Below the pieces are notes generated by a model that was not told the origin of the DNA, did not search any database, and worked only from the letters and a program-made list of their open reading frames with translations. From Podarcis erhardii (taxonomy: Eukaryota): DNA of 64,000 bases. The stretch lies in assembly GCA_964252035.1 (NCBI GenBank), contig OZ176200.1. The stretch is one strand, 5' to 3'. How positions within the stretch are numbered: the stretch's first letter is position 1; the number at the start of each line of letters is the position of its first letter. This document shows, piece by piece, positions 10,855 through 14,569 of this stretch. The translations under genes were made by a program, and so were the position numbers.

Positions 10855-11446
10855 CCATATTTTTCTGTGTATTGGGCGCTCCCATGTATAGGATGACCCC
10901 TATTTTTGGGGACTCCAAATTAAGAAAATGGAGGGAGATTGACCTGAATTGTTGATGAAAATCGCTCACCCGCCGGACTAATGTTGACAGCCACACACCT
11001 CTAATAAGCTGCTTATCAGCTGTTCCCTCGCAGGCAGAATCAGAAAATCACTGAGCTTTTTGTGGGAGAGGCTCAGGAGGGGGACAAGGTGCAAGGTTTC
11101 TATGACAGGAAAGACGCAGAGAGGTGGTATTACTTTGATCGCCATGGCCAACTGGAGCTGCAGCAACGCTCACACGTAGCTGATCACAGACTCTGTGCGG
11201 CACAAATGGACCACCTTCAGCCTCCCTTCCAACTGTAGGGCGGGCTGAGTGGGAGGAGCCAAGCAGACTACGGAGGCCCCGTGGCTCGCCACTGCGAGGA
11301 GCTGCAACTGCCAGAGCATGTATGGCGGCAAGTAACATATTTATTTATATATTTAATTGATATATTCCATGTATAAGATGACCCACATTTTTAAACTTGA
11401 AAAAATTGGGGGGGGGGGACCTTGTCTTATACATGGAAAAGTACAG
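10855..11446. mobile_element. pogo/Tigger-type non-autonomous DNA transposon
   Basis: TA-flanked imperfect TIRs CCATATTTTTCTGTGTATT / GTCTTATACATGGAAAAGTACAG, internal GTATA(A/G)GATGACCC repeats. Confidence 0.7.
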
Positions 11447-12024
11447 TAACATGATTTCTAGTAATATGAATGATGTCACATCTCTCATGATGCTGAGTGA
11501 GTGAACTGAGTTGCGCTTGGTATAGACGTCACCAAGGCTTAAAGCAACACTGCATCAGGGTCAAAGGAGCACACATGCATATTCTAACTGCCTCCCTGAG
11601 CTATCTTGGTGGAAGATGTCCTAGAGAACATTCCACTTTGTTTAAGCAACAACAGCATAGTCTATTAATGCTGTGTGAAAGGATTTTGGAAAGCAATACT
11701 GTAGGGAAACAGTGTACGAAACAAATATAGTCAACCTTTCTCTTTTCAAAATCTCTATGGGTTATTCATCAAAATTCTTTGCAATTCCATAATCAAATGT
11801 GCACAAATAGCCCCTGAATTCATCTATTGTTACTAGGGAAGTGTCATTTTAAATATGCCTTTAGCACAGCCCTCCCCAACTTGGTACCCCACCAGATGTT
11901 TTGAACTACAACTTTCATCCCTCCGATTTCCACATAACCAGAAAATTGCTGGATGAGAAAGACCATCCTCCTGGTAGGGATGGGAAAGACTAAAGTTGCT
12001 CATTATATGCAAATTAAGAGCCAT

Positions 12025-12237
12025 TTACAGATAGGTAGCCGTGTTGGTCTGCCATAGTCAAAACAAAATAAAAAAATTCCTTCCAGTAGCACCTTAAAGA
12101 CCAACTAAGTCAGTTCTAGGTATGAGCTTTCGTGTGCATGGTATCTGAAGAAGTGTGCATGCACACGAAAGCTCATACCTAGAACTGACTTAGTGGGTCT
12201 TTAAGGTGCTACTGGAAGGAATTTTTTTATTTTGTTT
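12025..12237. mobile_element. Penelope-like element pseudo-LTR fragment in inverted (head-to-head) arrangement
   Basis: Perfect 14-bp TSD AAATTAAGAGCCAT (12011-12024, 12238-12251); ~80-bp inverted arms with 1 mismatch; carries a hammerhead core typical of Penelope-like elements. Confidence 0.85.
12140..12179 (+). ncRNA. Minimal type I hammerhead ribozyme
   Basis: GGTAT-CTGAAGA-A-GTGTG(CATG)CACAC-GAAA-GCTC^ATACC: stem I GGTAT/ATACC, intact CUGANGA and GAAA core, stem II, palindromic loopless stem III (AGCT), CUC cleavage triplet. Confidence 0.85.
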
Positions 12238-14569
12238 AAATTAAGAGCCATGCAGCTGTGGACTACTCTGGTCTAATTCAAATGCATGGAAAGTGGATTA
12301 ACAGTTAATAATACTAAAATGTGGACAAGCCCTTAGACATGCTTAGAATAAACACATTTTTAGGGGAAAGACTAACTTTGATTGTAATTGTTTTTCATGA
12401 ATTTTCATGGCTTGATATAGATCCAAACACCAATTCTATGCTTGGTATCTTTTCTTTTTACTAATCCCCTTGGCATAATTTTCCAGGTGATTTGCCATGA
12501 ACCAGAGCTAAAGATCCAACACACAAGTTCTTCTTCCTGTGCATAAGTGTTTTCCCCAATAGTTGTAGACAAGGACACAGTATAACACCATCGAACCTAT
12601 ACCATTATTGGCTCACTTTTGTTAACTTGAACTAACTTGAGTTTGCTTGAAATTTATTTCCTGAAATTTACAGTTTAGGTTCTCAGTCAGAAGCCACATT
12701 CAGATGAACCATGATTTGGAAGACTGGGAATGAATCTTGTGTTTCACATTGCCACTTCTCCTGTTCCTTCACATGTGTAGCTGAATTCAGTGTTTCCTAT
12801 TTTGAGCACCAGATGGGGCAAATTATGGCTTGATGGATCAATGCTCTCAGGCAAGCAGACAGCTCTCTTTGTTAAACTGTTAGGATTTCTGGGCCACCTG
12901 ATTCTTTGCTTCCTCACCAGTTGCTGTGTTCGTTATATCAAACTAATCATTAGTTCAGTGTCTTCTAACACGTCCCTTGAAGAGCCACAGACCACACTGT
13001 TACGCTACCAGCGATCTTAATGGCATTGAAATCCATTTTAAGGTTTTCTTTGCTCTGAGGGAGGGAAGTTCCTTGCTGGCACTCTTGTCTGGCTGCTTAG
13101 TGGAGAACAGAAGATGAAGACTCTAAGAATTAGAGACTTCAGCCTTTAGCCTTCCACAAGGCTCATATTTCATTGCAACAAAATGGATTTCATGTAACCT
13201 TAGTTGTGTAAATCCACAGCTTTGTGGTGAGCCTGATATCTCCCCAAAGGGCCTGGAATGTGGTGGCAGCTGTTTTGCTGCTATCCTCTATGTCTTTAAT
13301 AGATCCCACAGTTTTCTCTATTATACCTCCCATGTATTTGATAGCTGCCATCTGCTCAGTTTCTTATCTGGAACTGACTAATACTGAACCAGGGAGCTCA
13401 GTGGTTGAGGCTGTTTAATGTTGGCGACCTTGTCAATAATCAGACCAGTATTTGTTCGTACTTAGCCCGCCAGAGTCATCAGCAGTTGTACTCATTTCAA
13501 ATATTAGCCAACGGAACAATGCCTTCAGAGTATTTGAGGCCTGACAGCAATATTGTACTCATTCAGCATAATAATTTGTCACGATACTTGCCCATCATTC
13601 AATAAATACAAATTCAGGGCACAGAAGTATCTATTCCAAATACCCTTAAAAACTCCATACAACAGTTGCCATTTTTTTTTTCAACTAAAGGAAGCCACAG
13701 CCTCTTTTTTATATTAAACAATATGGATCAAGAGGGAAATATAAATATATAAATAAGAAGCACATACACACATAGAGAGAGAGAGAGAAATAATAATTAT
13801 GCTGACTAACAAAACTATATTAGATGTTTTCAGGACCCACCCTATTCCTGTGATTGTAATCTGTTTTAACTGTTTTTAATTCTGAATTTGTTGTAAGCTT
13901 CTCTGGGACCTGCTGGTGAAGAGCATAAATTGATAATAATAGAACTCCTTCTCTTGGACACAATAAAAAACCCAGCCTGGATAATAAGAAACATGCATAC
14001 TGGGCTTTGAGTAGAAAAATGTAGCATGGGACAGAGGGGTATCAAAGGAGAGAAAACGTGTAGGAGGAATAAAAAAGAACATCTGAAGTATTTGTGGATA
14101 AAATGTATTATAAAATCTACCATAGTGAGATCAAAATTTTCAAAAGTAGAGGCTCCGTGCCTTTGCTAATAAAAAAATAGGGGTTCCATAGTACAGTATT
14201 TAGCTAACTGGGAACCACTGCCATAAACAGTTTAGGATCCCCCCCCCCAAAAAAAAATGCTTCAAGATTGGCAAAAGAAGCTCTTAATTATGTGCTATTC
14301 ATATGAGAGCTCCGTTCAGTACAGCATACAGCATTCTCTGTAGTGGTATCCAGTTTGTGGAATGACCTCTCCTCCTAAGTTTAACAGAAACCAATATTTA
14401 TGATTGGGGAAGAAATTTGATTCATATTTAAAGGTGAGCCTAGTTAATTCACACTTTCTGAACCAATATGTGAACAGATATCCTTTGAAATTTGCACTTC
14501 TCTGATTTTTGCAATACAATTACCTAGTCAAGTAATGTGTTCATAAATTCATATATTATGCTAAAGTAT

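What the first reader, a model, noticed from the sequence alone, without database searches (positions are those of the whole stretch)
12140..12179. Intact minimal hammerhead ribozyme in a Penelope-like insertion
Seen: all catalytic core positions are present (C3-A9 = CUGAAGA, G12-A15.1 = GAAA, U16.1, C17), with stem I GGUAU/AUACC, stem II GUGUG/CACAC and an extra A between A9 and G10.1. Stem III is the loopless palindrome AGCU. Established: Penelope-like elements carry minimal type I hammerheads thought to cleave as dimers, and an extra A at this position is known from a viroid hammerhead. Inference: a plus-strand transcript through this locus could self-cleave after 12174. The first G of stem I comes from the inverted arm, so the junction lengthens stem I to 5 bp.
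Basis: partly seen in the sequence, partly recalled or inferred. Interest (0 to 1): 0.82.

Follow-up and report, generated by a model that had tools for sequence, protein, structure and literature searches.

The report
Penelope fold-back insert with hammerhead motif
The hammerhead ribozyme motif is really there, but it is one ordinary copy of a hugely abundant lizard Penelope-like retrotransposon whose minimal hammerheads are already described, and in this copy an 80-bp inverted repeat should lock the RNA in a hairpin that prevents self-cleavage.

Summary
Observation confirmed. Positions 12140-12179 (+) carry every hammerhead core base, a 5-bp stem I, a 5-7-bp stem II, an extra A after A9 and the loopless palindrome AGCU. 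It is the only such motif in the window, against 0.007 expected by chance.

It sits in a 213-bp insertion (12025-12237) flanked by a 14-bp target-site duplication. The insertion has the published Penelope-like element (PLE) signature. Two 5'-truncated copies lie in inverted orientation (80-nt arms, 99% alike). A 36-bp tail is present at one end only.

Contigs from three related species pile up on the insert at roughly 10^4-10^5 times the flank depth. They show both classes of 3' end and many other fold-back junctions.

The extra base after A9 and the palindromic helix III are published hallmarks of PLE minimal hammerheads.

The self-cleavage inference is not supported for this locus. There is no partner ribozyme in cis. 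Helix III is worth only -2.5 kcal/mol. The ribozyme fold costs +36.6 kcal/mol against the fold-back hairpin.

This scan already holds 128 notes on the same theme in this genome. The kind is known and interest is low.

The parts
12011..12024 (.). Left copy of the 14-bp target-site duplication AAATTAAGAGCCAT
   Evidence: Direct repeat family D1 ends at 12024 and 12251; sequence read.
12025..12060 (-). 36-bp PLE 'tail': an extra 3' extension of the antisense (left) copy, absent from the right copy. It contains the AC-rich ACCAACAC on the sense strand.
   Evidence: The left arm runs 36 nt beyond the inverted repeat. Other copies end both at 12025 and at 12060/12061 with AT-rich flanks (loose ends). 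This matches the 30-40-bp optional tail of PLEs, often present at one end only (PMC8557442, PMC11167929). The predicted stem-loop is weak.
12061..12140 (-). Left arm: a 5'-truncated antisense copy of the element. It holds only the 3' part of the hammerhead (loop II to stem I 3' strand), so there is no ribozyme on the minus strand.
   Evidence: Inverted repeat I1, 80 nt, 99% complementary. The single mismatch is 12103 against 12195. The descriptor scan finds no minus-strand motif.
12140..12179 (+). Complete minimal type-I hammerhead motif; predicted cleavage site between 12174 and 12175
12141..12157 (+). 17-nt spacer of the palindrome. It is the extra 5' stretch of the sense copy that supplies stem I 5' strand, CUGAAGA, the extra A and stem II 5' strand.
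   Evidence: Other copies continue upstream of 12141 with ...GACTTCTGTTTCAGT.
12158..12237 (+). Right arm: the sense copy from hammerhead loop II to the tail-less 3' end
   Evidence: Loose ends behind 12238 with AT-rich flanks.
12238..12251 (.). Right copy of the target-site duplication

Best explanation
Positions 12025-12237 are a dead, 5'-truncated fold-back insertion of a very abundant squamate Penelope-like element or a non-autonomous derivative of one.

Inferred mechanism: the element's endonuclease cut both strands of an AT-rich target 14 bp apart. Each 3'-OH then primed reverse transcription of element RNA. The top strand started at the tail end (12025) and the bottom strand at the internal start site (12237). 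The two antisense cDNAs ran toward each other. One stopped in hammerhead loop II (12140) and the other 4 nt upstream of C3 (12141). They were joined, each probably serving as second-strand template for the other.

The sense arm happens to retain the whole minimal hammerhead that the family carries. In the parent element this ribozyme is thought to process multimeric transcripts as a dimer or with help from the element's protein.

At this locus the motif is a passenger. It has no partner in cis. It has lost the outer part of the family's helix I. In any read-through transcript its 3' half would be buried in an 80-bp hairpin, so self-cleavage here is very unlikely.
For: Shown at this locus:
- A 14-bp TSD and an 80-nt, 99% inverted repeat with a 17-nt spacer.
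- Whole-insert RNA minimum free energy of -147.9 kcal/mol, z = -21.8, as one hairpin.
- A ribozyme-competent fold that is disfavoured by +36.6 kcal/mol.
- Only one hammerhead motif.

Shown for the family:
- Summed contig depth of 10^5-10^6 over the insert against 30-80 in the flanks, in three related species.
- Loose ends with AT-rich flanks at 12025, 12060/61 and 12238, which means two classes of 3' end.
- Dozens of joints from variable left-arm positions to 12141, which are other fold-back copies.
- No variant of 10% or more inside 12141-12173. Position 12174 (C17) is U in 11-47% of depth, still an allowed H17.

With the family-typical upstream sequence, the minimum free energy fold is the hammerhead with helix I = 4 bp + 5-nt bulge + 5 bp. 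This copy lacks the outer 5 bp.

From the literature:
- An inverted 5'-truncated copy and a 30-40-bp tail, often at one end only, are typical of PLEs (PMC8557442).
- The anole PLE protein cleaves and extends both target strands, starts reverse transcription internally at two sites that bound the tail, and prefers AT-rich targets. Its hammerhead cleaves only with protein present, and no RNA-seq ends were found at the cut site (PMC11167929).
- PLE minimal hammerheads have a base between 9 and 10.1, G10.1-C11.1 and a palindromic 15.2-16.2. They have a long helix II, a short helix I and low in vitro activity (PMC4209133).
Against: No reverse transcriptase or GIY-YIG coding sequence is in the insert. 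Ten long ORFs of the window gave no Pfam match. The PLE assignment therefore rests on structure and on the ribozyme, not on a protein. The family sequence was not found in the paper library, and it differs from Poseidon_Ac. The double-strand priming model is inferred from in vitro data on another PLE. Thermodynamic folding ignores co-transcriptional kinetics, helicases and the element's protein. Depth from contigs is not a copy number.
Confidence: 0.85

Rival explanations
1. The motif is an active ribozyme at this locus. A plus-strand transcript cleaves after 12174, either by pairing AGCU with a second hammerhead RNA in trans or with help from PLE protein or helicases that open the hairpin.
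For: All core positions are intact and stems I and II form in the isolated 40-mer. The core is invariant across the family within the likeness threshold used. The PAc hammerhead is activated by its protein (PMC11167929).
Against: The ribozyme fold costs +36.6 kcal/mol against the hairpin. Helix III is worth -2.5 kcal/mol. The predicted homodimer of the 40-mer is a stem I/stem II-swapped duplex, not a double hammerhead. There is no cis partner. The outer helix I of the family is missing. An RNA library shows no depth in the flanks (X7, a very small run). Published min-HHR activity is low even as dimers (PMC4209133).
Confidence: 0.05
2. If transcribed in either direction, the insert acts as a long hairpin RNA (80 bp, 17-nt loop). 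It would be a substrate for dsRNA pathways (Dicer-type small RNAs, A-to-I editing) rather than a ribozyme. At the DNA level it is a near-perfect palindrome prone to cruciform formation and deletion.
For: The hairpin has a minimum free energy of -147.9 kcal/mol and z = -21.8. Rfam microRNA-precursor models score 53-59 bits on it purely for hairpin shape.
Against: All those Rfam scores are far below gathering thresholds of 95-113. There is no evidence of transcription of this locus. This reading describes a by-product of insertion, not a selected function, and it does not conflict with the best explanation.
Confidence: 0.1
3. The hammerhead-like pattern is a chance match in AT-rich repeat DNA.
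For: The minimal descriptor is short. At 0.007 hits per 64 kb, a gigabase-scale genome would hold a few hundred chance hits (extrapolated).
Against: The motif is part of a family present at very high depth in three species with the core unchanged. It shows the non-descriptor hallmarks reported for PLE hammerheads: a base after A9, G10.1-C11.1 and a palindromic 15.2-16.2 (PMC4209133). It lies in an insert with PLE structure.
Confidence: 0.01

Closest known systems
Minimal hammerhead ribozymes (min-HHR) of metazoan Penelope-like elements (Cervera and De la Pena 2014, PMC4209133; Lunse, Weinberg and Breaker, RNA Biol, cited in PMC6765202)
   Same: Type-I topology and the CUGANGA / GAAA / UH core. 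One unpaired base between A9 and G10.1, and a G10.1-C11.1 pair. Long helix II (5-7 bp) and short helix I (4-5 bp). No helix III loop, only a palindrome (A-GC-U). Located in PLE terminal repeats, massively repeated, and reported in reptiles.
   Different: Nothing in kind. This particular lizard family sequence was not found in the papers searched. In this copy the fifth stem I pair is created by the fold-back junction, and the family's outer helix I is missing.
Poseidon_Ac (PAc) of Anolis carolinensis (PMC11167929)
   Same: The hammerhead architecture matches: CUGAGGA, one extra base, stem II, GAAA, the palindrome ACGU and C17 (read from the consensus). Insertion behaviour also matches this locus: both strands primed, two reverse-transcription start sites bounding a 30-40-bp tail, and AT-rich targets.
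   Different: No sequence similarity was seen by eye to the PAc consensus around the hammerhead. In PAc the ORF starts at stem II. Here the ATG in loop II (12159) opens only 7 codons before TAG, so this stretch is non-coding.
Non-LTR retrozymes of animals (PMC7229834; bioRxiv 10.64898/2026.07.22.740005)
   Same: Short non-coding units with type-I hammerheads, related to PLE terminal repeats, and present in reptiles.
   Different: Retrozymes are direct tandem repeats with a hammerhead in each unit, which allows dimer cleavage and circular RNAs. This insert has one hammerhead and inverted, not tandem, copies.
CChMVd (+) viroid hammerhead with an extra A after A9 (De la Pena and Flores 2001, cited in PMC4209133)
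   Same: An extra unpaired base between A9 and G10.1.
   Different: It is a type-III viroid ribozyme with a full helix III, and it is unrelated in context. The PLE literature already lists this extra base as its own hallmark.

Membership tests
Hammerhead ribozyme, minimal PLE type I variant | Conserved core: C3 U4 G5 A6 N7 G8 A9, G12 A13 A14, A15.1-U16.1, H17 | tested here: met
   CTGAAGA at 12145-51, GAA at 12167-69, A at 12170, T at 12173, C at 12174.
Hammerhead ribozyme, minimal PLE type I variant | Helix I open at the ends (type I) and helix II closed by G10.1-C11.1 | tested here: met
   Stem I is 5 bp, of which 4 come from the element and 1 from the junction. Stem II is GUGUG/CACAC, extendable to 7 bp.
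Hammerhead ribozyme, minimal PLE type I variant | One unpaired base between 9 and 10.1, a palindromic 15.2-16.2, and no loop 3 (PMC4209133) | tested here: met
   A at 12152; AGCU at 12170-12173.
Hammerhead ribozyme, minimal PLE type I variant | A second hammerhead nearby, so that helix III can form in a dimer | tested here: not met
   It is the only motif in 64 kb on either strand. The left arm lacks CUGANGA. The AGCU/AGCU duplex is worth -2.5 kcal/mol.
Hammerhead ribozyme, minimal PLE type I variant | Self-cleavage 3' of position 17 | not testable with these tools
   Only contigs were available, so no read ends could be seen (table 6: none). Folding predicts that the active fold is excluded in a read-through transcript.
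Rfam hammerhead families (covariance models in Rfam release 15) | A covariance-model score at or above the gathering threshold | tested here: not met
   No hammerhead match at gathering threshold or at E up to 10 on 11900-12400. This may be because the motif lacks the helix III hairpin found in classical hammerheads; that explanation is my inference.
Penelope-like element insertion | Target-site duplication and 5' truncation | tested here: met
   A 14-bp TSD. Both copies are truncated within or just upstream of the hammerhead.
Penelope-like element insertion | An adjacent inverted 5'-truncated copy forming inverted repeats (PMC8557442) | tested here: met
   80-nt arms, 99% alike. Many other fold-back junctions exist in the family (joints).
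Penelope-like element insertion | A 30-40-bp tail, often at one end only (PMC8557442, PMC11167929) | tested here: met
   A 36-bp extension at 12025-12060 on the left arm only. Family copies end at both 12025 and 12060/61.
Penelope-like element insertion | An ORF with a telomerase-like reverse transcriptase and a GIY-YIG endonuclease | tested here: not met
   The insert is 213 bp and non-coding. Ten ORFs of 117-218 aa from the window gave no Pfam match. This is expected for a truncated or non-autonomous copy. The autonomous parent was not identified.
Animal non-LTR retrozyme | Direct tandem repeats, each unit with a hammerhead | tested here: not met
   One hammerhead; the copies are inverted.
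microRNA precursor (Rfam mir-559, MIR2619, mir-4782) | A score at or above the gathering threshold | tested here: not met
   53-59 bits against thresholds of 95-113. The matches reflect hairpin shape only.

The most novel reading that the evidence does not exclude
Fold-back PLE inserts of this family, with the catalytic 5' half of the hammerhead exposed in the apical loop and the substrate half locked in the stem, could act as conditional ribozymes. They would cleave only when a helicase or the PLE protein opens the hairpin. Alternatively they could be a genome-wide source of hairpin-derived small RNAs that silence the family itself.
Probability: 0.04. Interest if true: 0.45.

Novelty: already known. 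Interest (0 to 1): 0.15.

Why it matters
It matters little as a discovery. Minimal hammerheads in Penelope-like elements have been described since 2014, including in reptiles. The fold-back-plus-tail structure is the textbook PLE insertion signature.

The locus is still a clean natural example of an in vitro result for the anole PLE. Both target strands appear to have been cut and used as primers, with two alternative reverse-transcription start sites. In one insert, one arm has the tail and the other lacks it.

It also shows that an intact ribozyme core in such inserts says nothing about local activity. The same insertion process that preserves the motif buries it in a hairpin. This should temper the many similar notes the scan has made in this genome.

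Tried and rejected
- Rfam at gathering threshold on the whole window and at E up to 10 around the site gave no hammerhead family. The only matches were sub-threshold microRNA-hairpin models caused by the inverted repeat.
- I searched the window for further copies by pattern and by sensitive blastn. None were found apart from the two arms.
- A Pfam scan of ten long ORFs, meant to find a PLE protein or a host gene, gave nothing. Gene context and direction of transcription stay unknown.
- A paper search for a 14-nt piece of the tail sequence gave no hits. The Lunse et al. paper (PMC5785218) is not held and is cited only through a review.
- The bacterial promoter/terminator scan is irrelevant for a vertebrate and was ignored.
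- The tail stem-loop is not more stable than shuffles, so I make no claim of a structured reverse-transcription start site.
- All sequencing runs were contigs of unknown kind. RNA end mapping at 12174/12175 was therefore impossible (table 6: none).
- Whether the insert is absent at the orthologous site of the related species could not be settled. The relevant low-depth joint would be hidden among 200 joints that were not shown.

Full report
**1. The observation**

The + strand at 12140-12179 reads GGTATCTGAAGAAGTGTGCATGCACACGAAAGCTCATACC. In hammerhead numbering this gives:
- stem I: 12140-12144 with 12175-12179
- C3-A9: CUGAAGA (12145-12151)
- an extra A (12152)
- stem II: GUGUG/CACAC with G10.1-C11.1 (12153-12166). 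Stem and loop together form a 14-nt perfect palindrome, so up to 7 pairs are possible.
- G12 A13 A14 (12167-12169)
- A15.1-G-C-U16.1 (12170-12173)
- C17 (12174)

A descriptor scan of my own finds this as the only hit on either strand of the 64-kb window. Three hundred dinucleotide-preserving shuffles gave 0.007 hits per window with the relaxed descriptor and none with the observed stem lengths. The isolated 40-mer folds into stems I and II at -10.1 kcal/mol.

**2. What surrounds it**

The motif sits in a 213-bp insertion, 12025-12237, flanked by a perfect 14-bp direct repeat AAATTAAGAGCCAT (12011-12024 and 12238-12251).
- The insert is a fold-back with arms 12061-12140 and 12158-12237, 80 nt each and 99% complementary, separated by 17 nt.
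- The single mismatch is 12103 against 12195. At 12195 most family copies read T rather than this copy's G, so the right arm carries a private change.
- The right arm is the sense copy. It extends 17 nt further 5' than the left arm, and those 17 nt (12141-12157) supply the catalytic 5' half of the hammerhead.
- The left arm is the antisense copy. It stops in loop II, so the minus strand has no hammerhead. It extends 36 nt further at its 3' end (12025-12060).

**3. Evidence from related sequence**

Organism A holds 80-94% of the sampled words. Organisms B and C hold 51%, so they are close relatives. I laid their contigs on 11700-12600. This showed the following.
- Summed contig depth is 10^5-10^6 over the insert against 30-80 in the unique flanks, in all three species. 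This is not a copy number, but it indicates a family of very many copies.
- Contigs of other copies leave this locus at 12025, at 12060/12061 and at 12238, each time into AT-rich sequence. The family therefore has two alternative 3' ends, 36 nt apart.
- Fifty-nine to 87 contigs per run leave at 12141 into ...GACTTCTGTTTCAGT. That is where this copy is 5'-truncated, and typical copies have T where this locus has G12140.
- Many joints run from variable left-arm positions (12044-12108) to 12141. These are other fold-back copies with different junctions.
- Within 12141-12173 no variant reaches 10% of depth. Position 12174 (C17) is U in 11-47%, which is still a permitted H17.
- A small library labelled "RNA?" (X7) holds family contigs but none in the flanks.

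The scan's own notebook shows 128 notes with the words hammerhead and Penelope, listed as being in at least one genome. The eight shown are all from this genome and include TSD-flanked fold-backs and perfect palindromes. I treated these as leads only.

**4. What it is**

The combination matches the published description of Penelope-like element insertions:
[quoted passage not shown] - hammerhead motifs in the pseudo-LTRs (PMC8557442)

The hammerhead itself matches the minimal PLE variant of Cervera and De la Pena (PMC4209133). That variant has a long helix II, a helix I of 4-5 bp and an unpaired base at the 5' end of stem II. It also has a conserved G10.1-C11.1 and a palindromic 15.2-16.2 without loop 3.

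The consensus of the anole element Poseidon_Ac, read from the supplement of PMC11167929, has the same architecture with a different sequence: CUGAGGA, one extra base, stem II, GAAA, ACGU, C. There the ORF starts in stem II. Here the ATG in loop II opens only seven codons. This stretch is therefore non-coding, and the family may be a different PLE or a non-autonomous derivative. No RT or GIY-YIG sequence was found in the window.

**5. How it most likely arose (inferred)**

The purified anole PLE protein behaves as follows (PMC11167929):
- It cleaves and extends both strands of its target.
- It prefers AT-rich DNA.
- It starts reverse transcription at internal sites of the RNA that are not homologous to the target.
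- The optional tail corresponds to the stretch between the two start sites.
- Unprocessed RNA is the dominant template.

Applied here, this gives the following steps:
- Staggered cuts fell 14 bp apart.
- The top-strand 3'-OH after 12024 primed a cDNA from the tail end, giving the left arm.
- The bottom-strand 3'-OH primed a second cDNA from the inner start site, giving the right arm.
- Both templates were uncleaved at the hammerhead site, since both arms run through it.
- The two cDNAs ended at 12140 and 12141 and were joined, each probably serving as template for the other's second strand.

The hammerhead is intact only because the second cDNA happened to stop four bases upstream of C3. The fifth stem I pair is an accident of the junction.

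**6. Would it work here?**

Three points argue that it would not.

First, the motif has no helix III of its own and needs a second hammerhead. The window has none, and AGCU/AGCU contributes only -2.5 kcal/mol. The predicted homodimer of the 40-mer is a stem I/stem II-swapped duplex at -37.2 kcal/mol, not a double hammerhead.

Second, with the family's usual upstream sequence the minimum free energy fold is a hammerhead whose helix I is 4 bp + a 5-nt bulge + 5 bp. This copy lacks the outer 5 bp.

Third, bases 12158-12179 pair perfectly with 12119-12140 as the top of an 80-bp hairpin. The whole insert folds at -147.9 kcal/mol with z = -21.8. Enforcing stems I and II with an open core costs +36.6 kcal/mol, whether 138, 213 or 413 nt are folded. 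Only a transcript starting at 12141 would escape this (+3.6 kcal/mol), and nothing suggests such a start.

Published assays add to this. A single min-HHR showed no cleavage, and dimers showed low cleavage (PMC4209133). The PAc hammerhead cleaved only with protein present, and no RNA-seq ends were seen at its cut site (PMC11167929).

The caveats are that equilibrium folding ignores kinetics and proteins, and that no read-level RNA data were available.

**7. Rfam**

No hammerhead model matched at gathering threshold or at E up to 10. I attribute this to the absence of a helix III hairpin in the motif, but I did not test that. The sub-threshold microRNA-precursor matches are hairpin-shape artefacts.

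**8. Age**

The arms differ at 1 of 80 positions. The contig of organism A runs from the left flank into the insert (to 12047). The orthologous contigs of B and C stop matching exactly at 12024 and carry 38-39 further letters (records 1, 9, 17).

**9. Verdict**

The identification as a PLE minimal hammerhead is supported, and the junction detail is supported. The inference of self-cleavage at this locus is not supported. The kind is already described, the family is hyper-abundant in this genome, and the scan has noted it many times. Interest is low.

Noticed in passing
window 11886-11947: A moderately repeated stretch: summed contig depth of 395-1455 against 30-80 in neighbouring unique sequence, in all three species. 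It is probably a fragment of another squamate interspersed repeat lying about 80 bp left of the PLE insert.
   Followed up: no
window 12258-12320: A mildly repeated or polymorphic stretch right of the insert (depth 131-634). Contigs of organisms A and C both break at 12255, and several variants lie at 12285-12309 in organism C.
   Followed up: no
window 12141 upstream, in other copies of the family (loose ends): Typical copies continue upstream with ...GACTTCTGTTTCAGT. This gives a helix I of 4 bp + a 5-nt bulge (CUAGA) + 5 bp (UCAGU/ACUGA). The family's hammerhead is therefore less minimal than this truncated copy suggests, and it may keep a stem I bulge like canonical type-I hammerheads.
   Followed up: partly
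window 12024/12025 and 12251/12252: Orthologous contigs of the two related species stop matching exactly at the left insertion boundary, while the contig of the closest organism runs into the insert. The insertion may be lineage-specific or polymorphic.
   Followed up: partly
window 12153-12166: Stem II plus loop II is a perfect 14-nt palindrome (GTGTGCATGCACAC). Annealing of two converging cDNAs at this palindrome would give spacer-less, perfectly palindromic inserts, such as those the scan noted elsewhere in this genome. This is inference only.
   Followed up: no
window 11406-11419: A run of about eleven G after an A-run (aaaaaattggggggggggg) upstream of the region. This is low-complexity sequence of unknown origin.
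   Followed up: no
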